Positions 1 to 12,096 of a DNA stretch of 64,000 nt are shown piece by piece. The notes under the pieces are model-generated. The model searched no databases. It saw only the letters and a program-made list of their open reading frames with translations, and was not told the DNA's origin. Both the position numbers and the translations under genes were made by a program. Within the stretch, counting starts at the first letter, position 1; every line of letters begins with the position of its first letter. Location of the stretch: the sequence record NC_048779.1; one strand, given 5' to 3'.

Positions 1-3000
1 TTGAAGTCGTAGTTTTCTGTTCCTGCTGCTGTTGGTTTAACCAGTACGCGGAACGTCCCTTTGCTAACATCTAAGTCTAGGTAGCTCTCCTTACCACCCA
101 CAGTCATTGTCGCCTTAACGTAGTGGTCCAGTTCAGTCACTGGAACTCCGTCTACCGCTAATTTACCGCTTAACGTGTTCCATTCACCTACTACTAATGA
201 TTCCGGAGAATCCGCGTCGAACACTAAGTCGTTTGGCGTGACTGCCGGTTTACTTTCCCATGTCACCGAGAACTCTTGACGACCAGCGTCAGTAGTTAAG
301 ATGTAAGTCTTAGTTCCTGTTCCGCTATGCGCAAAGTCCAGTAAGTGGGATTTAGACTCACCAGTGGTTACACGGTTAAACAATACCTGATCCAATATTT
401 CCGGATCAAAGATACCTACCGTGGACAACGGACGAGGGTTACCGTCACTTGCTACTGCTTGAACACTGACTAACGCACGCTCACCTTCAGGTACTGGGTT
501 AGTAACCGTTAAGTTAGCGAATCCAGTTGGAGGTGTAAGTGGATCGTTAGCCCACCACTGACGACGTTCCTTAACAAGGTCACCGTACTTAGCGTAGATC
601 AAACGGTTAGCGTTACTTCCTTTCTGAGGAACGTTAAACTCAGCAATACCAAACTCGTTGGTAGTTACAGTTGTTAACAGTGTGCCCGATGCCGAATCCA
701 AGTGCAGAGCAATAGGAACACCTGCAATGCCCTTACCTGAACTATCTAAAGCGGCGAATGGTACAAACGCGGTTTGTCCCGGTACTGCATTAGAGTCAGA
801 ATAGCGCATGACCTCAATTGAATCCACTGGGAGTTTCCACTCAACAGTATGTCCAATACGAGCAACGTCTGGTTCCCAACCAAATTCGTAAAGCACTGGA
901 CCTGCTTCAGTTGAAGTGTAATCCAGACTCCAAGAACCACCCGGAGGAGAACGGAAGGCGTTTTGTGGTTCGCCATTAATGAACGGTCGTACTGAAACGC
1001 CATCGATCGGATCGCCGTATTGATCCAAAGTAACCGCAGTCAGTTTCACAGACTCACCAACCATCCCTTCGGTAGGTTGTTCACCAACCCACTCAATAGA
1101 GGTGAATACCGGTGCCGCTTCCTCAACTGTGATTGTGACCGATCCCAAGTACTTACCTTGATAAGTATGGAAGTCAAACAACACATCCCCTTCATCACTA
1201 AAGGTGTAAGCAAACGACCACGTACCGTCCGGTGTAACTGTGAACTCGTAGGTGTTACCCTCACTGCTGTTTACGTAAACCGTGATACTCTTAGCTGGTG
1301 CAATTGGATCACCAGCGCTATCCAAGATGGTGCCTTGGAGAGTATGTGTGGTAGCAACGTTAACCTGAGTAGGAACACTCGCATCCAACTTAACCGCTTT
1401 CAGGTCTTCGTTTTCCGCATCCCAAGAAATACCTCTGATAGAACCCACATTGCCTTCAGTAACAAGGCTGTAGTTGTAAGTACCATCTGGTTTGACTGGG
1501 AGTTCGATATCGAACGTACCATCTGCTTGAACTTGTGCAGAGTAATCCGTTAAGTCAAACGACCCTTGATCGAACACTTTAAGGAATTGTGGACCTGCTA
1601 ACGGTGTGCCGTCTTGATCTACAACTGTACCTCGTAGTGTTGCTGTTGTGCCGGAAGCCGGTTTAGTGTCAACCACGTAACCAGTTCTTGAAGTCTTACG
1701 ACCAAATCCAGCCGCGATCTTAGGATCACTACCTACCCAAGACAACGTCAAGGTATCTTGAATACCGCCCAACTTAGCAGTGATTACTACGTCACCCACT
1801 TCAGTGGCTTCTTTAGGCCAGTAACCAATGTAGGTCTCACTGTAGATGTTTTCAGTACCCAGAGGGTCACCAGAAACATCACCTTCATAGAACTCCACTA
1901 CACGTCCGGTAACGCTTTCTCCGTTCTCATCCACCACTCGGATTGATACATAAGCATCATCACCGACAACGGCCTTAGGTTGAGAGTCTGCGTTAAACAC
2001 CAAGCTTACCGTCTGACACCACTTGATGTCTACCGTGTCGTAAGTGTTTTCTCCGACCTTAAAGGTAAAGCTTTGAGTTTCCACTTGATCATTCGTCGGC
2101 TTCACGCTGAATGTACCGTCAGTATGAATCGTGCCTTGGAACTCAGTAGTCTCATCCAGTACCAGTGTGAACAATTCTTCAACGATTGGTCGGTAAAGTT
2201 GGTTCATGGTGTTGTACACTTTACCCGTTAATGAGAAGTCTTCGTTCAGACCCACTTTAACTGTACTAGGGACATCAAAGTTGCGTAAAGTACCCGCACC
2301 TTCAAAGAACTCAACAGCATGGGTCGCTAGGACTGTCTCACCATCTTTAAAGGTATATGTGATGGTTTCACTTACGTCATGAGTCGCATTAAAGGACCAG
2401 TTACCTTGTGCATCGATTACCGTTGGAAGAACATCGTCGTTTTTGTCATTCACAACATCCAGAGTGTAAATTCCTTCATCTGGTGTGAACGGTGTCCCGA
2501 TGGTATCCGTGGAGCTACCAAAGATCTCAACTGTGTCACCTAATAGACCGCGAGTGCCGCTATCAGGATCAATTTCGATGCTTGCTAAGATACCACTACC
2601 TCCCCAACGCGTCGTTTGACGATCGATGTTACCTAGTGTGGCGAAGATCAACTCATAGGTCTTAAACGGATAAGGACCTAACTCTACACTAAACGTACCG
2701 TCTGGTTGAATGTTGTCAGTCAGTACAGTGTTAGTCATCTCCGTCTTGTTGTAGACCGCGAGTTCACCGTTAGCGTAAGGATTACCGTCTTGATCTAAGA
2801 TCTTACCAGTAATTACTGCTTTGTCGTCTCCTACTACCTTCTCAGGCACCACTAAGGTTTCAAAGCGGTCACCGGTTAACTCAGGTGACTCTACCCAACG
2901 GATTAATAACGACTCTCCGGTCACACCACCGTTGTAACCACTCGACATCGTAAACTCAGGGAAACTTTCGTCATGGTTCCAAGTTACTTCTGCCATGCCA

Positions 3001-6000
3001 TTAAAGTCACTCTTAACGTTGACTTTATACTCGAAAGAGTTTCTTGCACCCGGAGTAAATGTCAGGCACGCGTCAGGCACTACGTCCCCGTTACCATCTT
3101 TAACAATCACCCCTACGGTTGCACTTCTTCCTTTAGCTGGCTTAGGTGTACTGTAAGGTAACAACGTAACGTTAAGTTGATCGTAGTAATTGATTTCTTG
3201 AGTATCAATCACCACACCGTCAACCTTAAAGTTGTAAGGATGTTTACCGGCTGGTTTACCTTCTCCCAACTTAGCAACAAATCGACCTTTCGGTGTGATG
3301 TAAACTGGGTGGTTTTGTGTGTCAGAAATTTGAGCTTCCACATAACCGGTAAGTACCGCGGTATCCCCTGACCCATCGATAGCCGTACCATCAATCCACT
3401 GATCAAGGTTGAATCGGATAAACGCATTACCACTGTTATTGAGTGTGTTGAATCGTGTTGGTTTAACCAACGCGGTATCCTCATCCCAAGTCATTGTGGT
3501 TACCATCGCCGCGTTTTCACCAAAGATCACCAATTCATGATCACCTGAGGTTTGTGTAGGAACACGGTATAGGTTGAAACGTTCGCCGTAGATATCAAGA
3601 TCACTTTCTATTTCAGTTAATACGATCTCTTGAAGTGTTCGCTTGTCAAAGGCACGAATCACAGCGCCAGTTACATGTGACTTCGTTTCCCATGGAGTAA
3701 CATTACCGCCCGGGTCCGTTGCGGCTGGACCAGACGCATAACTCATGTGTGATAGAGGACTGAGTTTAATCACACCGTCTTCACCATCCGCCACATGTCG
3801 AGTCGCTTCAAAACCATGCAGCTCTTCAACCACTGGATTTGTCACACCCCATTCAACAATGGCGTTTGCTGAAATACCTTCGCTCACAACAAAATAAGTC
3901 AGGTCACCAGAATTAGGAGTGTCTGGATTATCGTTTACCATAAACTCAACAATACCGAACTCATCGGTAGTTTTAGTATCCACCAATAGTCCTGTATCAC
4001 TTCCTAAGCGTAGTTCTATTGATTGACCTACCATTGGTTTGTCTACGGAGTTAATGCCGGCAAACGCAAGCGTAGCGCTTCCTGTTTGTTTAACTTTACT
4101 GGTCGAATAAGGAAGTGTACGGAGTTCTTTAAGTACGATAGGTGCTTCGGTCACAAACACCGTGCTAGGGATTACAGCGCTGTTCGTCGCAAACACCAAT
4201 TCGTTTGCACCAAGATCATAAGGACCGATGTTGATGTCAAACGTGCCATCGCTGTTGATGTTGCCGTTGAACATCTTTCCACCTAGAGTGGACTTGTTAA
4301 ACACCACCAACCACATGATAGAAGTGTCGGATTGACTTAAATTACCAACTAACTTACCGGTTACCTGAATAGGTTGACCGACGTAGGTTTGAGGACTGAT
4401 CACTAGGTCAGCGATTTCAATTGCTGAATTCTCAGTATCGGACGCCCAACGAATGGTGCGGTTGTCTTTTAAGTCTGTGCCGTTAATAAACGCAGTCACT
4501 TCATCTTGCGGTGTACTTGGTGTAGTAATAGTATCTGGGTTGTAACTTAAAACAAGTTCAGCCACACCAAACTCATCCGTTACCACCTTACCGTAATCCA
4601 CACCTGCGTCGTAAGTGTTTGTAAAGTTAACCAACATCCCCTCGATGCCATTAGAGTCAGCATCTTTCACCACAACAGCCAAGGTAGCGTTGTGGGTCTT
4701 CGCAACTTTGTCACCAGTGTAATTAGCGAATTCAATCACCGGGGAAGCGATAAACTCTACTTGGTGAACGTAAAGGTTATTGCCGTCGTCTAAGATGGAG
4801 TAAGTCTTAGTCTTAATGGTATCGGACGTTGCTTCAAAAGAGAACGACCCAGATGGCCCCACTTTAACTTTAACTGTCGTCGCATTCTCGTCACGGATGG
4901 AAAGTTCCATTTCTTCCACAGGACGAACAACGTTACCTTCACTGTCAATGATTGAGCCAGATACCGTAACCACAGTGTCAACAACTGCTGATGTCGGTGA
5001 GGTAGGGTCCAATTGGATACCAGCAGGTTCATTGGCAGTAGCACCACCCCAAGTTAATGACAGCTTACGTTGAGCATTCCCGCTGTAGAATACCACATCG
5101 TGGTCTCCGTCCGGCATGGTAGGGAAAGAAACTGAGTAAGTCCCTTTAGCATTCTCAGTGATTTCAGCAAGGTAAGATTCGTAGAAGAAACTGTTCAGAA
5201 CCACCACACCACAATCGGCAAGGTCACCTTTCGTTCCATCTTGGTTTAATGCTTCTAGCTCAATTGATAAACGCCCGCCAGTGTTAACTGGGTTAGTGTA
5301 ATCGAAGTAACCAAACTCACTGATTACGTCACGATCGTTCACCCACGTTATACCACTAGATTCCGTATTCGGACCCATAACACAACGAACTTCGTGATAA
5401 CCACTTAGTTGAACACCATCAATTTCTGGTGGGAGTGAATACTCCACTATCCCGTTATCGTCAGTTAGTTTCGTTTCCAGTTCTTTCCATTCCCCGTTTA
5501 CACGAACAGACAGACTTGCCGGAATACCAACTACAGGAATTAATTTGGCGTCTTCAATCAAGCTTGCACGGTAAGCAACTAACCCTTCATCACCAATGTA
5601 GATGTTCGGGTAAGAAGAATAGTTCAAACGTTCAGTACGTAAACCCGGAGGGAAACCGATCGCCCATTCTGTTGCTTTCTCTAAAGTAACACCAGTGGTA
5701 CCAAGAACAAGGTTGTGCTTACCTTTTTCTAACGGACCAAAGTCAAAAGAGAAAGTACCGTCACCGTTAACCGACGACATATCCACTGGAGTATGTCCTA
5801 GCGTGTGTTTGTCGAACACTCCTAAGCGAGACGGTTTAAACCCATTCCCGCCTTGATCGTAAATACGACCGCTAATGGTCATGGCGTTTACGGTGTCACC
5901 CACACTAGGGAAGGACATGTTACGGAATTCACTAGCCACAGAAGAACCACTGAAAGAGACTTCATGGTCAGCAGACTTGCTTCCAAACTCAACACCCGTT

Positions 6001-7322
6001 CTCACTGAGGTTGCGGTTCCGTTTTTAGAAACCGAAGTCTCCACAATACCGAACTCATCGGTCACGGCTTGTCCGTAACCATCCGGGTCCCAAGTTACAA
6101 TCTGAGCGTAAGGAATACCCTTACCTTCTGCATCGAGTAATGCAAAAGCGACGTCACCAGTACCGTTGGTGTAGAGTGTTGTGACAGAATAAGGAAGAGT
6201 CTTTAATTCAGCAGCAGCGATGAATTCACCTTGGTGTGTAACAACTTCTTCACCGGCGGTGTTTTTGATTATTTCCGTTACGGTTTCACCCACTTCCCCT
6301 TTAATGGAGAAAATGAAAGAACCATCAGGGTACATCGAGACCGTTCTTACTTGACCATCTTTGTCTTCTATCCCAATAGTGGTGAATTCAGTTGGAGTGT
6401 GATTACTACCGTCTGATTCTAAAGCTTGACCGTAGATGTTAGACCAACTTCCGCTTGGGTAAAACTTAGCATTCCCCATTGGGAGTGTTACGTCATGAAT
6501 GTCCGGATTAGGGAAGGTACCAGACTCTACCGTAAACTCAATGAACTGACCTTCGGTATACGCGACTAAGTGGTGTTTACCTTCCGGTAGTGAGTCGAAC
6601 GTATGTAGGAACCCATCTACATTAATTGATTCTTTTTGCGTAGTAACGCTTTCTAAAGTGTCTTTGTTAAAGATATCAATATCGGAAACCCATAATGGTT
6701 CACCGGCTGCATCTAAGATAGTGCCAGAAACACTACCACGTCCGATGGCATTGATTTTCTCAATGTATTTAAAGTCGCCGATTCCGAAGCGACCTTCTTC
6801 TTCACCATCTTCCCACTGCATGTAGTTGCTGTTAATGTTACCACCTGCTTTCGCAAAATAGTTGACATTAACTGGTGAGTTTTCACGAGGAGTTGTGTAT
6901 GTTGCTATACCAAATCCATCAGTTTTAACTGTCGCCACTGGCTCGGAGTTTTCGTCGTCGCGGTGGATGGTCACATCCGCATAGGGAACCCCATTACCTT
7001 GGTCGTCTTTTACCGCAAATGCGATAACACCAGTGTTACCAACTTTAATGCGGAAATTAGAATACGGCAAGGTTACTACTTCAGCTGTTTCAATGAAACG
7101 CACCGCGTGCGCACCTACATCTACTCCATTGTAAATAAAAGTGAAGTCGACCTGAGAGTCGACTTCAGCGTTCACTTCTAAGGACCAATGACCAGAATCA
7201 TTGGTCGTGATAGTCACATCAGGTAGGCCGTCCGATCGGACGGCCTTTAATGTGACGGGTTTACCCGGGTTTACTTCGTTGCCTTCAGCATCGAGTAAGT
7301 TCCCTCTGATAATACCTGCCAT
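1..7322 (-). CDS. Giant Ig-like (Big/invasin-like) repeat protein, >2440 aa, 3' end runs off the window; probable tail-fibre/adhesin-like virion appendage
   Basis: Not in the ORF track because no stop lies in the window. ATG at 7322 with AGGA SD (TAGGAAATAATAA-ATG), starting MAGIIRGNLLDAEGNEV. Segments I translated (1-60, 2520-2630, 5400-7322) are open in one frame and show recurring ~90-100-aa beta-rich modules (G.I.D..G...DG.F, TDEFGIV, H.V.W). Confidence 0.85.
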   Translation of the reverse strand, partial: MAGIIRGNLLDAEGNEVNPGKPVTLKAVRSDGLPDVTITTNDSGHWSLEVNAEVDSQVDFTFIYNGVDVGAHAVRFIETAEVVTLPYSNFRIKVGNTGVIAFAVKDDQGNGVPYADVTIHRDDENSEPVATVKTDGFGIATYTTPRENSPVNVNYFAKAGGNINSNYMQWEDGEEEGRFGIGDFKYIEKINAIGRGSVSGTILDAAGEPLWVSDIDIFNKDTLESVTTQKESINVDGFLHTFDSLPEGKHHLVAYTEGQFIEFTVESGTFPNPDIHDVTLPMGNAKFYPSGSWSNIYGQALESDGSNHTPTEFTTIGIEDKDGQVRTVSMYPDGSFIFSIKGEVGETVTEIIKNTAGEEVVTHQGEFIAAAELKTLPYSVTTLYTNGTGDVAFALLDAEGKGIPYAQIVTWDPDGYGQAVTDEFGIVETSVSKNGTATSVRTGVEFGSKSADHEVSFSGSSVASEFRNMSFPSVGDTVNAMTISGRIYDQGGNGFKPSRLGVFDKHTLGHTPVDMSSVNGDGTFSFDFGPLEKGKHNLVLGTTGVTLEKATEWAIGFPPGLRTERLNYSSYPNIYIGDEGLVAYRASLIEDAKLIPVVGIPASLSVRVNGEWKELETKLTDDNGIVEYSLPPEIDGVQLSGYHEVRCVMGPNTESSGITWVNDRDVISEFGYFDYTNPVNTGGRLSIELEALNQDGTKGDLADCGVVVLNSFFYESYLAEITENAKGTYSVSFPTMPDGDHDVVFYSGNAQRKLSLTWGGATANEPAGIQLDPTSPTSAVVDTVVTVSGSIIDSEGNVVRPVEEMELSIRDENATTVKVKVGPSGSFSFEATSDTIKTKTYSILDDGNNLYVHQVEFIASPVIEFANYTGDKVAKTHNATLAVVVKDADSNGIEGMLVNFTNTYDAGVDYGKVVTDEFGVAELVLSYNPDTITTPSTPQDEVTAFINGTDLKDNRTIRWASDTENSAIEIADLVISPQTYVGQPIQVTGKLVGNLSQSDTSIMWLVVFNKSTLGGKMFNGNINSDGTFDINIGPYDLGANELVFATNSAVIPSTVFVTEAPIVLKELRTLPYSTSKVKQTGSATLAFAGINSVDKPMVGQSIELRLGSDTGLLVDTKTTDEFGIVEFMVNDNPDTPNSGDLTYFVVSEGISANAIVEWGVTNPVVEELHGFEATRHVADGEDGVIKLSPLSHMSYASGPAATDPGGNVTPWETKSHVTGAVIRAFDKRTLQEIVLTEIESDLDIYGERFNLYRVPTQTSGDHELVIFGENAAMVTTMTWDEDTALVKPTRFNTLNNSGNAFIRFNLDQWIDGTAIDGSGDTAVLTGYVEAQISDTQNHPVYITPKGRFVAKLGEGKPAGKHPYNFKVDGVVIDTQEINYYDQLNVTLLPYSTPKPAKGRSATVGVIVKDGNGDVVPDACLTFTPGARNSFEYKVNVKSDFNGMAEVTWNHDESFPEFTMSSGYNGGVTGESLLIRWVESPELTGDRFETLVVPEKVVGDDKAVITGKILDQDGNPYANGELAVYNKTEMTNTVLTDNIQPDGTFSVELGPYPFKTYELIFATLGNIDRQTTRWGGSGILASIEIDPDSGTRGLLGDTVEIFGSSTDTIGTPFTPDEGIYTLDVVNDKNDDVLPTVIDAQGNWSFNATHDVSETITYTFKDGETVLATHAVEFFEGAGTLRNFDVPSTVKVGLNEDFSLTGKVYNTMNQLYRPIVEELFTLVLDETTEFQGTIHTDGTFSVKPTNDQVETQSFTFKVGENTYDTVDIKWCQTVSLVFNADSQPKAVVGDDAYVSIRVVDENGESVTGRVVEFYEGDVSGDPLGTENIYSETYIGYWPKEATEVGDVVITAKLGGIQDTLTLSWVGSDPKIAAGFGRKTSRTGYVVDTKPASGTTATLRGTVVDQDGTPLAGPQFLKVFDQGSFDLTDYSAQVQADGTFDIELPVKPDGTYNYSLVTEGNVGSIRGISWDAENEDLKAVKLDASVPTQVNVATTHTLQGTILDSAGDPIAPAKSITVYVNSSEGNTYEFTVTPDGTWSFAYTFSDEGDVLFDFHTYQGKYLGSVTITVEEAAPVFTSIEWVGEQPTEGMVGESVKLTAVTLDQYGDPIDGVSVRPFINGEPQNAFRSPPGGSWSLDYTSTEAGPVLYEFGWEPDVARIGHTVEWKLPVDSIEVMRYSDSNAVPGQTAFVPFAALDSSGKGIAGVPIALHLDSASGTLLTTVTTNEFGIAEFNVPQKGSNANRLIYAKYGDLVKERRQWWANDPLTPPTGFANLTVTNPVPEGERALVSVQAVASDGNPRPLSTVGIFDPEILDQVLFNRVTTGESKSHLLDFAHSGTGTKTYILTTDAGRQEFSVTWESKPAVTPNDLVFDADSPESLVVGEWNTLSGKLAVDGVPVTELDHYVKATMTVGGKESYLDLDVSKGTFRVLVKPTAAGTENYDF
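3949..3968. repeat. 20-bp direct repeat copy (acaataccgaactcatcggt)
   Basis: Identical copies at 6043-6062 and 7790-7809; encodes TDEFGIV. Confidence 0.85.
6043..6062. repeat. 20-bp direct repeat copy
   Basis: Identical to 3949-3968 and 7790-7809. Confidence 0.85.
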
Positions 7323-7332
7323 TTATTATTTC

Positions 7333-10300
7333 CTATTTAGTGATTAACGCCACACGGTTAGAGCTTTCATCAATCCCAACAGAGTCAAAATTAACAAAGC
7401 TTGAATCCCAGCGCACAACGTGCTCTGAAATTTCAGCACCCGTGTAAACTACTAAATGATGGTCACCTTCGTCCAAAGGACCTAGTTTAACACTAAAGCT
7501 ACCATCCGAGTTCACGGCATTTTCGTGGAAAGTATGAGTGGTCTTATCGTAAATACCTACCCCATTGTAATCAGTGAGCGCACCGGATTTATCCAATACT
7601 TCACCGACTGCTTCCACTTCCGCACCAATCTCCACTTTAGTAGGGATTGATAGGTCACGGAAAGAAGTACCTACTTTAACAGTATCCTCAACCCATGTTA
7701 GGTTATGGATGGCAAGTGGAACAGTTTCCCCTAAGATGCCGGTAACCGTATCACTTGATTTGGCGTCGTTGTAAGGTAACGTGACTTTCACAATACCGAA
7801 CTCATCGGTGGTGAGTGTTCTAGGAACGTTACCCGGACCCGGACTACCAACAGCCACTAACACATTACGGTATTGGATTGGTTGGTTGCCATCTTGTTTA
7901 TAGATCAACCAAACTTCACCAGATTCACCTTGAGGTACTTCGTCGAAAGAGTAAGGAGCAACCGTCACCGATGCGTTCTCCACCCATTCGATTTCGATGG
8001 AGTCGTCAATGACATCACCTAGTTCACGGTAAAGTGAGTAAGTGTAAACCCCTCTACTCTCACTAGTTAGTGTCATACGAATCGTACCGTCCGGCATGAT
8101 GTTGGCATCTGCCTGTGGCCCTTCATCTGTACGCACTGAAAGCTTCTCAGGGATGCGTGGTGTGTACAACGCACCATTGGACTGGTAGATCTTACCTGTA
8201 ACAGGGAGCTCTTCTCCGGCAATAACAGCGGTAGGTAGTTGATCAACATCCCACTCGATATACGCACCGGTGATGTCTGGGACCGCCCACTCGACCGTAT
8301 GAAGTTCGTTGTTCACTTCGTTGTAAAGTACGATGTCTTTAGTAACGAAAGTGTCATTGATCATGTACGCTGTAAACTCACCCGTAACCGAGTCTTGCTC
8401 ACGGATAGACACAGGGATGTGTTCGAACGTACTACGATCGTAACCACCCAGTATGATGCCCGTGCTAACGTTATCTGGAATTAACGGGTCACCGTTTTCA
8501 TCCAACATCACACCAGTGAATAACAACTCTCTTCCGTAGGTAATTGCAGGGACAGACATTTGCGTCATGGTTACACTGATGCCAGTCTCGTCGCTCCATT
8601 TAACAACTACTTGAGCTTCTTTCAGACCTAGTGAGGCGAAGAACACACCGTGCTTCTCGTCTTCTAAGTAAGGTGCTTCGTAAGTCGCGATACCATGCTC
8701 ATCTGTAACGATGGTTCCTAGCTGACGCTCAGGCGAATAGATGGTAGACGTTTGGCGAACATTCAGTTCCACACCCGGCTTACCTTTACCGTCTTCATCC
8801 AGCACGTACCAACCAATAACACGGTTCATGCCGTAAGGAACACGGAACAAACGATCGTCGCTTGGTAACGCCGTAACCGTTATGTCGCCAGTGAAGTTGA
8901 TGGTGTAAGAACCTACCGCGCGGTTGTTAGCAGAGAACCCGTAAGTTGTACTGCCTGATTTAATACCTACCGCTTTATAAGTCCAATTACCATTGCCGTC
9001 TGATTGAGCTTTCTCAATAGTACCCGCAAATTCCACTTCAAATTCAAATGGAATACCCGGTAAGTAAGCTTCATCATGTTGGTCGAAAGTTTTGCCACTC
9101 AGGGTTACTGACTCACCAACTTTACCCGTTACCGGTAACCCGTCATCAAATGTAATCTTCGCAAGGCGTGGTGGTTCACCCATCCAACGAATGCTGTGAC
9201 TACCTTGATTACCGTTTTCCAGACGGAAAGTAAAGGTGGTTTCTTCCCAGTCACCGTAAGGTCCAACTTCCGCTTCAAAGCGTCCATCGAAACCAGCGTA
9301 GATGATCGTCTCGTCGGCATCCTTCAACTCCTTCATGTAAACCGGAGTACGGCTATCACTTGTGAAGTTGTTGCCTTCTTCATCCACCAACTGACCCGCA
9401 ATACGGACACTCGTACCCGCCGGTGCTTCAGGGACGTTATCAGGACTCATCACGATGTCGTGTGCGATCTTAGGTGCTTCTGTCCACTCCACGTTGCCAA
9501 AGGCAAAGCTGTTGTCAGTCCACACCACCACTTGGTAAACGTCACCCGGTTCCTTAGGAGAACCTGTCAGCTCGTATTTACCTGCGCCTGCGGTGTTAGC
9601 TTCAGCGTAAGGTTGCCATAACGGACCGTAACCGATATTAACTTTAACACCGTCAACCAAATCACCGTATTGGTCATAAACCAAACCTTTTACAGATAAA
9701 GGTTCATTTCCAACAAACGACATGTCTTCCACGTCTAAGGTAATACGGTCACCGTAAGGTTCAGTTTCTACCCAACGGATTAGGTGCTCATGACGGTTAC
9801 CCATCACAACCAGTTTAAAGGTAGTGCGGTCTTGTCCTTCTTTACGGATGCGAGTAAGTAAGAACTTACCTGTTTCATCAGTCGTCTCACGACGGATAGA
9901 ATCCAGATCATCATCCATGTAAGAGAAGAACTCAGTATCACGCAGAGGTTGACCTTCACTGTTCAGCAATTGACCGTAAGCACGACCCGCTTTGTTGATA
10001 CTCACTTTAGTAGGAGTGTACGGGAAGAACTCACCAACTTGTTGTTCCGGGTTAGACGTGATGCGAATGTCTTTACTTAAGAAGTAATCCGGAAGTTCAC
10101 CAGCGACCTCAAAGTCAAACTCAAACGTTTCCGTTGCCCCACTCACACGTTCAGACCATGTGAAGAAACGGAACGTGCCGTCTAAGCCAATGTCGACCTT
10201 ACGAGGGGTTGTGTCGTGTTGAACACCACCTTTCACCAACATCTTAGTCAGACCGTCGGTCACCAACGCACCTTTCTGATCATAAACGCGACCAGAGAAC

Positions 10301-12096
10301 TCGATCATTTGAAGCTCACCGATGCTGTTAGGAACGGAGGTATCAAACTCGATAGTAGTTGGAACTGGTGTTTCAGTATCCGGGCCTTCAGTGACGTCAA
10401 TAGAGATACCCGTAGTGGCTAGGATTAAACGATCACCTTGGATGGACTCGTGTATCCAACGAACGTAGATCGTACGACCTTGAGGCTCTTGGACATCCAA
10501 CCACATTTTCTCTGCATAACGGCTGATTTCGTACTCATACGTTTTACCAGACGTAGCTAAGATCTCAAAGTGAGTTGGTTCAATCGGACCTTTCTCACGT
10601 TGTGGGTTAAAGCCCGGTTCCACAGCACGATAGACTTGATCTAAGAAATCTTCTAAGTCATCATACTCACCACCGAAGGTGATTTCTTGACGACCATCCG
10701 CTTGGTTAATCGCTTTGAACGTTGGGTCAGAGTAAGAGGAACGATCGTAAGAATAACGAACATCGAACTTACTGCCGTCTTCAGTACCCGGTGCCTTCAG
10801 TACGAACGTGGTCGATTGACGCATGATCATAGGTTTAAAGGTCGGAACCACATCACTGAGTCGACAGTTCAACTCCAGTGTTTGCTCTACACCGTAAGTG
10901 GTAGGACGGAAAGCCGGTGACATTTCGTTAATACGAACGTGATCGGTGGCGTCAATCATGAACTTACGATCTAAGTCGGTCAGGAAGTGTTTCAGAATAT
11001 ACTGACCGTTCACCCAAGTAGGGTAAGAGTAAAGCTTAGGTGAATAAGCTCCATCAAACGGAACCGCTAACAACCAATAAGAACTACGGTATTGGTTAGG
11101 GTTGCCCGGCTGGGCTTCGTAGATGTGCTCATCTGCATCCAAGTTGTAAACTAGGGTTAATGTCCCACGTTGACTCGGAGTGGATGGTTTGTGTTCATTC
11201 AAACCCAGTAATTGAACTTTCTGACCATCAATCGCCAATTCATCTGAACGAGAACCATCACTGTAGTGAACCATTGCACGGAACGCTAGGTTCTGTAACA
11301 TGGTGTTAACTGGAACGTTCAATGTTTTCGGGTCACTGGTATTCAGGAACCAAGGGGCAAGTAGTTCAACATGTTTAATGTAACGTTTACCAACTTGATG
11401 GTCACGCAACATTGACGTATGTTGGACAGTAAGCGTTCGTGCTTTAGGAATTACATTACCTTTAGCGTCATACCAAACTAAGGTGGTACGCGAACCATCA
11501 GGTAGTTCGTCTGGGTTACGGTTCACTGAGAAAGGCTGTGTAATCATAATCTCTTTATTAGAGAGCTCATGATAAGCCGCCAGTGTAACCGGTACTCGGT
11601 CTGAAACTAACTGGTTGTTGTTAGAATAAACTACCGAGATAACTTTACCTTTGTCCCCAACGGTGTTGCCTTCGTAAAGTAACGCGTAAGCCGCACCCGG
11701 TGCCATGACCTGACCATCAATAACCGCACGGTTAGGACGTACAGAGTAGTCGATCGCAACGATGGCCTCACCTTGGAAACCAGAAGGTAAACCAAAGATG
11801 CCATCAACATCATTACCACCATCCCCAGTATTAAAGATAGGTTGGAGTGTTGATTTTAGATCCGATTCCCAGTTGACATGAGTAACCATGTACATTTGCT
11901 GAGCCTCAGGATCGAGCACCATTTCTTTTTCTCGGGGAACCACATAACGATGTGCTTCGCCCGGCTTCACTGTATCAGGATCGTAGATATCCCAAATGTA
12001 GTGAAGACGTCCACGGTCATTTTCATTAGGGAGCTGTGGACCAGCTCCCGGAATGACGGATGACTGAGACGGACTTTTTAAATCTTTCTCAAACAT
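7333..12096 (-). CDS. Virion structural protein (phiKZ gp26-like N-terminal ~570 aa) with a C-terminal ~1000-aa Ig-like repeat extension
   Basis: Track ORF 7333..12150; likely start MFEKDLK at 12096 (GAGG SD, 8-nt overlap with upstream stop). Third gene of the block divergent from the tail sheath, as for phiKZ gp26-28. Repeats begin after a Pro/Thr linker (EGPDTETPVPTT, ~10380). Confidence 0.7.
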   Translation of the reverse strand: MFEKDLKSPSQSSVIPGAGPQLPNENDRGRLHYIWDIYDPDTVKPGEAHRYVVPREKEMVLDPEAQQMYMVTHVNWESDLKSTLQPIFNTGDGGNDVDGIFGLPSGFQGEAIVAIDYSVRPNRAVIDGQVMAPGAAYALLYEGNTVGDKGKVISVVYSNNNQLVSDRVPVTLAAYHELSNKEIMITQPFSVNRNPDELPDGSRTTLVWYDAKGNVIPKARTLTVQHTSMLRDHQVGKRYIKHVELLAPWFLNTSDPKTLNVPVNTMLQNLAFRAMVHYSDGSRSDELAIDGQKVQLLGLNEHKPSTPSQRGTLTLVYNLDADEHIYEAQPGNPNQYRSSYWLLAVPFDGAYSPKLYSYPTWVNGQYILKHFLTDLDRKFMIDATDHVRINEMSPAFRPTTYGVEQTLELNCRLSDVVPTFKPMIMRQSTTFVLKAPGTEDGSKFDVRYSYDRSSYSDPTFKAINQADGRQEITFGGEYDDLEDFLDQVYRAVEPGFNPQREKGPIEPTHFEILATSGKTYEYEISRYAEKMWLDVQEPQGRTIYVRWIHESIQGDRLILATTGISIDVTEGPDTETPVPTTIEFDTSVPNSIGELQMIEFSGRVYDQKGALVTDGLTKMLVKGGVQHDTTPRKVDIGLDGTFRFFTWSERVSGATETFEFDFEVAGELPDYFLSKDIRITSNPEQQVGEFFPYTPTKVSINKAGRAYGQLLNSEGQPLRDTEFFSYMDDDLDSIRRETTDETGKFLLTRIRKEGQDRTTFKLVVMGNRHEHLIRWVETEPYGDRITLDVEDMSFVGNEPLSVKGLVYDQYGDLVDGVKVNIGYGPLWQPYAEANTAGAGKYELTGSPKEPGDVYQVVVWTDNSFAFGNVEWTEAPKIAHDIVMSPDNVPEAPAGTSVRIAGQLVDEEGNNFTSDSRTPVYMKELKDADETIIYAGFDGRFEAEVGPYGDWEETTFTFRLENGNQGSHSIRWMGEPPRLAKITFDDGLPVTGKVGESVTLSGKTFDQHDEAYLPGIPFEFEVEFAGTIEKAQSDGNGNWTYKAVGIKSGSTTYGFSANNRAVGSYTINFTGDITVTALPSDDRLFRVPYGMNRVIGWYVLDEDGKGKPGVELNVRQTSTIYSPERQLGTIVTDEHGIATYEAPYLEDEKHGVFFASLGLKEAQVVVKWSDETGISVTMTQMSVPAITYGRELLFTGVMLDENGDPLIPDNVSTGIILGGYDRSTFEHIPVSIREQDSVTGEFTAYMINDTFVTKDIVLYNEVNNELHTVEWAVPDITGAYIEWDVDQLPTAVIAGEELPVTGKIYQSNGALYTPRIPEKLSVRTDEGPQADANIMPDGTIRMTLTSESRGVYTYSLYRELGDVIDDSIEIEWVENASVTVAPYSFDEVPQGESGEVWLIYKQDGNQPIQYRNVLVAVGSPGPGNVPRTLTTDEFGIVKVTLPYNDAKSSDTVTGILGETVPLAIHNLTWVEDTVKVGTSFRDLSIPTKVEIGAEVEAVGEVLDKSGALTDYNGVGIYDKTTHTFHENAVNSDGSFSVKLGPLDEGDHHLVVYTGAEISEHVVRWDSSFVNFDSVGIDESSNRVALITK
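7790..7809. repeat. 20-bp direct repeat copy
   Basis: Identical to 3949-3968 and 6043-6062; lies in the neighbouring gene. Confidence 0.85.

What the first reader, a model, noticed from the sequence alone, without database searches (positions are those of the whole stretch)
7290..7420. An Ig domain is split exactly across the boundary of two giant virion genes (possible donor-strand complementation)
Seen: the upstream protein ends ...VRW-DSSFVNFD-SVGIDESSNRVALITK*, and 10 nt later the next gene starts M-AGIIRGNLLDAEG. Joined without the Met, this aligns gap-free with an intact internal module of the downstream protein (about 2515-2610: RW-GGSGILA-SIEIDPDSGTRGLLGD-TVEIFGSSTD). It also matches modules in the upstream protein (LPVTGKVGE-SVTLSGKTFDQ; VPEAPAGT-SVRIAGQLVDEEG). 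The spacer TAG-GAAATAATAA-ATG carries a good SD and shifts frame, so simple read-through cannot fuse the proteins. Inference: one ancestral gene was split inside a domain, and the C-terminal A/A' strands of the baseplate-anchored protein complete the N-terminal truncated Ig fold of the >2440-aa protein. That would give a pilus-like strand-complementation joint attaching a long, possibly swappable fibre.
Basis: partly seen in the sequence, partly recalled or inferred. Interest (0 to 1): 0.75.

Follow-up and report, generated by a model that had tools for sequence, protein, structure and literature searches.

The report
Ig repeat split between fibre genes
In a jumbo Vibrio phage, the boundary between a baseplate arm protein and a 3,529-residue fibre protein falls inside one immunoglobulin-like repeat; the arrangement is real and conserved, and the two proteins may lock together by sharing beta-strands, but that has not been shown.

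Summary
The window is Vibrio phage USC-1, a phiKZ-like jumbo phage of the genus Aphroditevirus. gp161 has an N-terminal domain homologous to the phiKZ baseplate protein gp26, followed by an Ig-like array. It ends 25 residues after its last G strand. A stop and 10 nt later, gp160 (3,529 aa) starts at the B strand of an Ig-like module.

Against a profile of 25 internal modules, the tail fills positions 1-25 and the head starts at 26. The tail's own similarity is weak (p about 0.001-0.03). Six Aphroditevirus-type loci keep the 10-nt spacer. Three Tidunavirus loci keep the head start but have a 125-129 nt spacer and a longer tail.

Among 1.84 billion representative proteins, the head domain occurs only at protein N-termini; no fused form was found. 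Both sides of the junction are islands of conservation. AlphaFold2 places A and A' as confident strands of an intact module and leaves the gp161 tail unstructured.

The complementation joint is plausible but untested; no two-chain model could be run. An ancestral single gene and a swappable fibre are not supported. The second fibre, gp159, has the same head and no adjacent donor.

Slip: my script printed a profile consensus line.

The parts
7333..12096 (-). Upstream gene (USC-1 gp161, 1,587 aa, annotated 'virion structural protein'), stop codon included
   Evidence: ORF and translation; RefSeq annotation of the identical record NC_048779.1
10396..12042 (-). gp26-like baseplate domain of gp161 (about residues 19-567)
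   Evidence: PDB 9xqd chain a, PHIKZ026, E 5.2e-46. PHROG 3430, E 1e-141. Homologues found in 290 phage records.
7411..10395 (-). Ig-like repeat array of gp161 (about residues 568-1562); 7 modules of the profiled type plus Big_1-like modules
   Evidence: Module alignment; Pfam Big_1 and CarboxypepD_reg hits, below the curated cut-off for this protein
7336..7410 (-). C-terminal tail of gp161: 25 residues after the last G-strand Trp, equivalent to linker + A strand + A' strand of a module
   Evidence: Aligns one-to-one with profile positions 1-25. Val, Ser, Asn, Leu and Ile are invariant in 9 loci from two genera. The last 16 residues are 94% invariant in three divergent species, against 67% in the array. 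AlphaFold2 predicts no strand and pLDDT about 70.
7323..7335 (-). TAG stop plus 10-nt spacer; AGGA Shine-Dalgarno core overlaps the stop; the reading frame changes
   Evidence: Sequence. A 10-nt spacer is kept in 6 Aphroditevirus-type loci. No promoter-like or terminator-like site lies at the junction.
7083..7322 (-). Head: N-terminal Ig-like domain of gp160 that starts at the B strand and has no A/A'
   Evidence: Profile positions 26-99; hhalign probability 99%. Pfam Big_1 matches only profile positions 24-93 of 93, and weakly. 83.5% invariant against 45% for the rest of gp160. The head profile scores 114 bits here and at most 25 bits on internal modules.
1..7322 (-). Downstream giant gene (USC-1 gp160). 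The window holds the first 2,440 of 3,529 codons; the gene runs off the window start.
   Evidence: Translation; full gene in L001:13679-24268
2295..2630 (-).
   Evidence: AlphaFold2 mean pLDDT 91.4. A strand at residues 15-20, A' at 27-29, B at 34-42. Foldseek hits: SbsC S-layer Ig domains and filamin domains, TM about 0.6.

Best explanation
gp161 is a gp26-type protein of the outer baseplate that carries a roughly 1,000-residue arm of Ig-like modules. Its last 16-25 residues are a conserved, unusually hydrophobic docking peptide that is free in the isolated protein. gp160, and probably gp159, begin with a specialised Ig-like head domain that genetically lacks the two N-terminal edge strands (A and A') found in every internal module.

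The most likely mechanism is that the gp161 tail lies down as the missing A/A' strands against the B and G strands of the head. That would complete the beta-sandwich in trans and tether the giant fibre to the baseplate arm. The 10-nt spacer, with its Shine-Dalgarno core overlapping the stop, would translationally couple the two genes in Aphroditevirus.

Shown: the gene boundary, its register, its conservation, the separate polypeptides, the baseplate homology, and the predicted role of A/A' in an intact module.
Inferred: the tail-head contact, its geometry and its stoichiometry.
For: - Register: the tail fills profile positions 1-25 and the head starts at 26.
- All 25 internal modules have A and A' before B.
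- AlphaFold2 makes A and A' strands of the following domain at pLDDT 86-98.
- The gp161 tail does not pack on its own last module.
- The tail motif is kept at protein level across two genera whose neighbouring residues are only about 29% identical, and with different codons.
- The head start is kept in the same register in 11 of 17 heads.
- Both sides of the junction are conservation islands.
- The tail's A' segment is more hydrophobic than that of 23 of 24 internal modules.
- In phiKZ, the C-termini of gp26 act as plugs inserted into several partners, with 5 copies per star lobe (PMC13250141). One donor type could therefore serve more than one fibre.
- Tidunavirus VP4B and pTD1 show a second in-register split at another strand boundary: positions 34 | 37-39.
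Against: - No tail-head complex was modelled or observed.
- The tail's similarity to A/A' is weak, and it lacks the conserved Pro and Gly.
- gp159 and the Tidunavirus fibres carry the same truncated head with no adjacent donor. Only one tail motif exists in the whole USC-1 genome.
- In Tidunavirus the motif is internal to a longer tail. That tail ends with its own A-A'-B, which would duplicate the head's B strand.
- C-terminal modules of several fibres end right after G, and heads start at B. A six-strand core may therefore be stable alone.
- CarboxypepD_reg-type profiles start at the B strand.
Confidence: 0.5

Rival explanations
1. The tail and the head are conserved for independent reasons. 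The gp161 tail plugs into some other baseplate component, as phiKZ gp26 C-termini do. The head is a self-sufficient six-strand adaptor domain that docks elsewhere. The in-register abutment is then either a historical trace of how the genes arose or a coincidence.
For: - phiKZ gp26 C-termini insert into the gp157 ring, into a gp130/gp139 interface and onto another gp26.
- Heads of gp159 and of 3-4 Tidunavirus fibres have no neighbouring donor.
- Fibre C-termini end right after the G strand.
- CarboxypepD_reg profiles begin at the B strand.
- The tail's similarity to A/A' is weak.
Against: - The chance that a tail ends within one position of where the head starts is about 3% if the two are independent. 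This is my estimate from the 99-position profile.
- A and A' are confident strands of the intact module.
- The tail is predicted free.
- Tail and head are co-conserved across two genera.
Confidence: 0.33
2. The last residues of gp161 fold back and cap gp161's own final Ig module, so no partner is involved.
For: None directly. C-terminal capping strands do occur in Ig arrays (my own knowledge).
Against: In the AlphaFold2 model of the last module plus tail, the module already has its own A and A'. Residues 106-128 have no strand and pLDDT about 70.
Confidence: 0.05
3. Recoding (stop read-through, frameshift or ribosome hop) makes a single fused giant protein, so the domain is not really split.
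For: The spacer is short and the two genes are co-oriented.
Against: - The downstream frame carries two stop codons directly before the ATG, and reading through the TAG runs into another stop after 15 codons.
- The phage has no tRNA genes.
- In Tidunavirus the same two genes are 125-129 nt apart, with a terminator-like hairpin and a conserved AT-rich box between them.
Confidence: 0.02
4. The boundary is a sequencing or assembly error, or a recent disruption of a single gene.
For: One public assembly holds a 34-residue frameshifted fragment of the head (P0013), so errors do occur in this region of some data sets.
Against: The same boundary is present in 8 distinct isolates and one metagenome scaffold, from several countries and two genera. 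The flanking codons are under strong purifying selection.
Confidence: 0.01

Closest known systems
Donor-strand complementation and exchange in chaperone-usher pili (type 1 and P pili; my own knowledge)
   Same: An Ig-like fold that is genetically incomplete would be completed by a strand from another polypeptide, giving a strong non-covalent joint in a fibre.
   Different: In pilins the last (G) strand is missing and the donor is an N-terminal extension. Here the first strands (A/A') are missing and the donor would be a C-terminal tail. There is no chaperone or usher, no sequence relationship, and no experimental evidence.
Type V pili of Bacteroidota (FimA/Mfa1 strand exchange; my own knowledge)
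   Same: The polarity is the same: a groove left by an absent N-terminal strand is filled by the C-terminal strands of the neighbouring subunit.
   Different: In type V pili the N-terminal strand is made and then removed by a protease; here it is never encoded. Those are homopolymers of lipoprotein precursors; this is a heterotypic joint between two phage proteins. No Pfam hit to those families appeared.
Filamin Ig repeats, in which the A strand of one repeat pairs with the neighbouring repeat (my own knowledge for the mechanism)
   Same: The module profile and the model hit filamin domains: PDB filamin-C at E 2e-4, TRIM3, Lin-41 and gelation-factor filamin domains at TM about 0.6, and Pfam Filamin for 2 heads. 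In filamin the A strand is a detachable element used for contacts between domains.
   Different: Filamin does this within one chain and for regulation. The similarity here is at the level of fold only (11-17% identity).
phiKZ gp26, cross-linker of the outer baseplate 'star lobe' (PDB 9xqd; PMC13250141)
   Same: The N-terminal ~565 residues of gp161 are homologous, and the gene lies next to a gp27 homologue and the sheath and tube genes. gp26 uses its C-terminus as a plug into partner proteins.
   Different: phiKZ gp26 is 552 residues with no Ig array. Its partners are gp157, gp130/gp139 and gp26, not a fibre head. phiKZ fibres (gp131-135) dock through helical N-termini.
Ig-like domains on phage structural proteins, some added by programmed frameshift (Fraser and colleagues, 2006; my own knowledge)
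   Same: Ig-like (Big-type) modules decorate tail and fibre proteins.
   Different: Those are whole accessory domains. Here a module is divided between two genes, and frameshift fusion is excluded.

Membership tests
Bacterial Ig-like / filamin-type beta-sandwich repeat | Sequence match to Ig-like domain profiles | tested here: met
   gp160 as a whole scores 71.6 bits against Pfam Big_1 (cut-off 34.9). Single modules and heads hit Big_1, Invasin_D3, Filamin, Big_6 and CarboxypepD_reg only below their cut-offs.
Bacterial Ig-like / filamin-type beta-sandwich repeat | Seven- to eight-strand beta-sandwich fold | tested here: met
   The AlphaFold2 model has pLDDT 91.4 and eight strands, A, A', B, C, C', E, F and G. 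Foldseek hits SbsC Ig domains and filamin domains at E 4e-4 and TM 0.6.
phiKZ gp26 baseplate protein family | Homology over the ~550-residue gp26 body | tested here: met
   PDB 9xqd PHIKZ026, E 5.2e-46, residues 46-561 against 30-544. PHROG 3430, E 1e-141.
phiKZ gp26 baseplate protein family | Gene neighbourhood: gp27 homologue and divergent sheath and tube genes | tested here: met
   The adjacent 860-aa gene matches PHIKZ027 (E 7e-41). Sheath and tube genes lie next to it.
phiKZ gp26 baseplate protein family | Location in the outer baseplate periphery, with the C-terminus inserted into a partner | not testable with these tools
   Known only for phiKZ from cryo-EM. No structure exists for any Gorgonvirinae virion.
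Chaperone-usher donor-strand complementation | The missing strand is the C-terminal G strand and the donor is an N-terminal extension | tested here: not met
   The head lacks the N-terminal A/A' and keeps G; the candidate donor is a C-terminal tail.
Chaperone-usher donor-strand complementation | Physical completion of the fold by a strand from another chain | not testable with these tools
Type V pilus strand exchange | An absent N-terminal strand is replaced by the C-terminal strand(s) of a neighbouring chain | tested here: inconclusive
   The polarity fits at sequence level. The contact itself is untested.
Type V pilus strand exchange | The N-terminal strand is removed by proteolysis; subunits belong to the FimA/Mfa families | tested here: not met
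   The strand is never encoded, because stop codons lie directly upstream of the ATG. No FimA or Mfa family hits appeared.
Ig-like domain added by programmed frameshift | Overlapping open frames that let a shifted ribosome continue into the Ig domain | tested here: not met
   There is a stop in the upstream frame and two stops in the downstream frame before the ATG. The Tidunavirus spacer is 125-129 nt.

The most novel reading that the evidence does not exclude
The giant fibres of Gorgonvirinae jumbo phages are hung on the baseplate, and in Tidunavirus perhaps chained to each other, by split Ig domains. The C-terminal A/A' strands (or A-A'-B strands) of one protein would complete the N-terminally truncated Ig head of the next. 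This would be a heterotypic, reversed-polarity counterpart of pilus donor-strand complementation, encoded at gene boundaries that cut through a repeat at different registers. One gp26-type tail would serve several paralogous fibre heads.
Probability: 0.4. Interest if true: 0.72.

Novelty: new variant of a known kind. Interest (0 to 1): 0.55.

Why it matters
If the tail really completes the head fold, this would be the first strand-complementation joint described in a phage fibre, as far as I know; two full-text literature searches found none. It would explain how a phiKZ-like baseplate carries 2,500-3,900-residue Ig-array fibres that phiKZ itself lacks. It would also give a sequence signature for finding fibre-to-baseplate joints in uncultured jumbo phages: a gene boundary inside an Ig repeat, a hydrophobic C-terminal tail, and a head that starts at the B strand. 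If it does not, the finding is still a well-conserved example of a repeat protein family whose genes begin and end at fixed places inside a repeat.

Tried and rejected
- Assembly error or broken gene: rejected. Nine loci keep the boundary.
- Read-through, frameshift or hop fusion: rejected on the frames, the stops and the Tidunavirus spacer. The phage has no tRNA genes.
- Fused relatives: phmmer of the head against 1.84 billion representatives gave 16 hits. All true heads sit at residue 1; the internal hits are generic Ig modules of unrelated bacterial proteins.
- Second donor for gp159: a six-frame scan of the whole USC-1 genome found only the gp161 tail motif and only two heads.
- Tail capping its own domain: not supported by the model.
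- Swappable fibre: gp160 orthologues are collinear.
- Rfam on the junction region: no hit.
- Literature on donor strands in phage fibres, and on these phages' fibres: nothing found. The pVa-21 paper has no virion proteomics.
Both jobs went to the intact module and the gp161 end, so the head alone was not modelled.
- A tail-head complex could not be modelled.
- The semi-global alignment of 34-residue tails that include the preceding G strand mis-places the Aphroditevirus tails, because the profile is not circular. The ungapped placement from the Trp is the result I used.
- Slip: my script printed the profile's consensus letters for the repeat module as an alignment ruler.
Full report
IDENTITY OF THE WINDOW. 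The region is 100% identical to Vibrio phage USC-1 (NC_048779.1; Caudoviricetes, Gorgonvirinae, Aphroditevirus; 238 kb; host Vibrio alginolyticus). The genome encodes a nuclear shell protein and PhuZ, so it is a phiKZ-like nucleus-forming jumbo phage. The two genes lie on the minus strand. The upstream gene, gp161, occupies window 7333-12096 and encodes 1,587 aa. The downstream gene, gp160, starts at 7322 and runs off the window start; the full gene encodes 3,529 aa (L001:13679-24268).

THE OBSERVATION. gp161 ends ...VRWDSSFVNFDSVGIDESSNRVALITK followed by TAG. After a 10-nt spacer, gp160 starts MAGIIRGNLLDAEG. An AGGA overlaps the stop, 8 nt before the ATG. The downstream frame has two stop codons directly before the ATG, and reading through the TAG meets another stop 15 codons later. 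The phage has no tRNA genes. No promoter-like or terminator-like site lies at the junction. These are therefore two polypeptides, probably co-transcribed and translationally coupled.

THE REPEAT AND THE REGISTER. Iterated HMM searches found 25 strong copies of a ~99-residue module in gp161 (7 copies) and gp160 (18 copies). In their alignment, every copy has the following parts after the G-strand Trp of the preceding module: a short linker, an A strand, a turn, an A' segment, and then the B strand.
- I built a profile from these 25 copies, leaving out both the head and the tail. The head matches positions 29-99 from residue 5 (E 2e-15), so Ala2 sits at position 26.
- The 25 tail residues counted from the last Trp align one-to-one with positions 1-25. 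The two pieces, analysed separately, abut exactly if the initiator Met is not counted.
- hhalign of 11 natural heads against the modules gives the same register (probability 99%).
- Pfam Big_1 matches the head, weakly, over profile positions 24-93 of 93 only.
- The tail's own similarity to A/A' is modest. It scores 6.4 bits at the right offset, against -1.4 for the next best. Against shuffles, z = 3.3 (p about 0.001). The A/A' part alone gives z = 2.0 (p = 0.025). It lacks the module's best-conserved Pro and Gly.

CONSERVATION.
- Five Aphroditevirus species (USC-1, Aphrodite1, PDCC-1, 2 TSL-2019, phiKT1019) and one metagenome scaffold (L012) all have the stop, a 10-nt spacer and the same head start.
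- The sister genus Tidunavirus (VP4B, pTD1, phiKT1028) also has two genes. Its spacer is 125-129 nt and holds a terminator-like hairpin and a conserved AT-rich box.
- In all nine loci, Val, Ser, Asn, Leu and Ile of the tail motif are invariant, although the neighbouring module is only about 29% identical between genera and the codons differ. The constraint is therefore on the protein.
- In three divergent Aphroditevirus species, the last 16 residues of gp161 are 94% invariant against 67% for its Ig array. Residues 1-85 of gp160 are 83.5% invariant against 45% for the rest.
- The tail's A' segment is more hydrophobic than the same segment in 23 of 24 internal modules.

WHAT THE HEAD IS. A phmmer search of the head against 1.84 billion representative proteins returned 16 hits. 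Every true head, recognisable by its Arg-Ser/Asp-Asp-Gly core, lies at residue 1 of its protein. The internal hits are generic Ig modules of unrelated bacterial proteins. No fused form was found.
- The head is a distinct subfamily: 114 bits on heads against at most 25 bits on internal modules.
- It occurs at the N-terminus of every giant fibre gene of the cluster: gp160 and gp159 in USC-1, four genes in VP4B and five in phiKT1028.
- gp160 ends right after a G strand. It is separated from gp159 by 147-165 nt containing a strong terminator hairpin.
- The whole USC-1 genome holds only one tail motif. If the tail is a donor, it must serve more than one kind of head.
- That is conceivable. The N-terminal ~565 residues of gp161 are homologous to phiKZ gp26 (PDB 9xqd, E 5e-46). 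The neighbouring gene is a gp27 homologue. In the phiKZ virion, gp26 is present in five copies per star lobe of the outer baseplate and uses its C-terminus as a plug into several different partners (PMC13250141).

STRUCTURE PREDICTIONS.
- An intact gp160 module (residues 1565-1676, with an alignment of window-encoded paralogues) was modelled at mean pLDDT 91.4. The A strand (residues 15-20) and A' strand (27-29) are strands of the same sandwich at pLDDT 86-98.
- The nearest solved folds are SbsC S-layer Ig domains and filamin domains, at TM about 0.6. The nearest predicted viral structures are proteins of the same phage group.
- The last module of gp161 plus its tail gave a confident module with its own A and A'. 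The tail (residues 106-128) has no strand and pLDDT about 70. The tail therefore does not cap its own domain.
- The head alone and the tail-head pair were not modelled.

COMPLICATIONS.
- In Tidunavirus the motif is followed by 35-45 poorly conserved residues that look like A-A'-B of a further module, ending at profile position 34. This would overlap the B strand of the next gene's head.
- Several fibres end right after G and heads start at B, so a six-strand core may be stable by itself. CarboxypepD_reg-type profiles begin at B.
- In the other direction, the first fibre of VP4B and pTD1 also ends at profile position 34, and the next gene's head starts at 37-39 with its B strand absent or shortened. 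In phiKT1028 the upstream protein has no such tail and the next head keeps its own B strand.
- In L012, a 3,712-aa gene and a 1,444-aa gene are separated by 16 nt inside the linker/A/A' part of a generic module. Gene boundaries inside a repeat thus recur in this group.
- The gp160 orthologues are collinear over their full length in five species (54-96% identity), so a swappable fibre is not supported.

VERDICT. The upstream protein is baseplate-anchored. Trans completion of the head by the gp161 tail is the best single explanation (about 0.5). It rests on register, co-conservation and single-chain models only. The main rival (about 0.33) is that the tail and the head each bind something else. 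Artefact, recoding and self-capping are excluded or unlikely.

Noticed in passing
window 7213-7256 (-) and 7142-7167 (-): Two hairpins lie inside the first 200 nt of the gp160 coding sequence. The first is an interrupted 18-bp stem around a perfect 20-nt palindrome (7226-7245). The second is an 11-bp stem followed by a T-rich run, which looks like a terminator. Synonymous sites are frozen in codons 19-40 and 49-64 across five species. Folding z-scores are -4.6 and -6.8. Hairpin 1 is kept in the metagenome relative L012, with changes only in the loop or to wobble pairs. It is absent from the gp159 head and from the Tidunavirus heads. There is no Rfam match. They could be an attenuator that sets the gp161:gp160 ratio.
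   Followed up: partly
L006:19059-19160 with L006:19282-19460; L007:19080-19181 with L007:19301-19480: In Tidunavirus VP4B and pTD1, the first giant fibre ends with A-A'-B of a module (profile position 34). After 119-121 nt, the next gene's head starts at profile position 37-39. This is a second in-register split at a different strand boundary. The phiKT1028 orthologue has no such tail, and its next head keeps its own B strand.
   Followed up: partly
L012:20060-20260: In the metagenome relative, a 3,712-aa gene and a 1,444-aa gene are 16 nt apart. The boundary again falls in the linker/A/A' part of a generic module, not a head-type module.
   Followed up: partly
L001:24416-27001 and L009:23033-30685 (USC-1 gp159); the gp160 orthologues in L002 and L005: The RefSeq and GenBank names 'TonB family protein / TonB-dependent receptor' and 'putative invasin' look like side-effects of CarboxypepD_reg and Big_1 repeat hits. 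These are Ig-array fibre proteins that carry the shared head domain.
   Followed up: partly
Fibre clusters in L001 plus L009 (USC-1), L006 plus L010 (VP4B), and L008 plus L011 (phiKT1028): The cluster is cut into different numbers of genes in different phages: 3 in USC-1 (7,666 aa in all), 5 in VP4B (7,566 aa) and 6 in phiKT1028 (8,574 aa). Similar totals with different partitioning would fit repeated fission or fusion of repeat genes, but this was not tested.
   Followed up: no
window 12089-12096 (-): The gp27-like gene (860 aa) and gp161 overlap by 8 nt, another tightly coupled boundary in the same operon.
   Followed up: no
protein P0013 (public assembly, 34 aa): A 34-residue product matches the USC-1 head over its first ~22 residues and then diverges. 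It looks like a single frameshift error in another data set.
   Followed up: no
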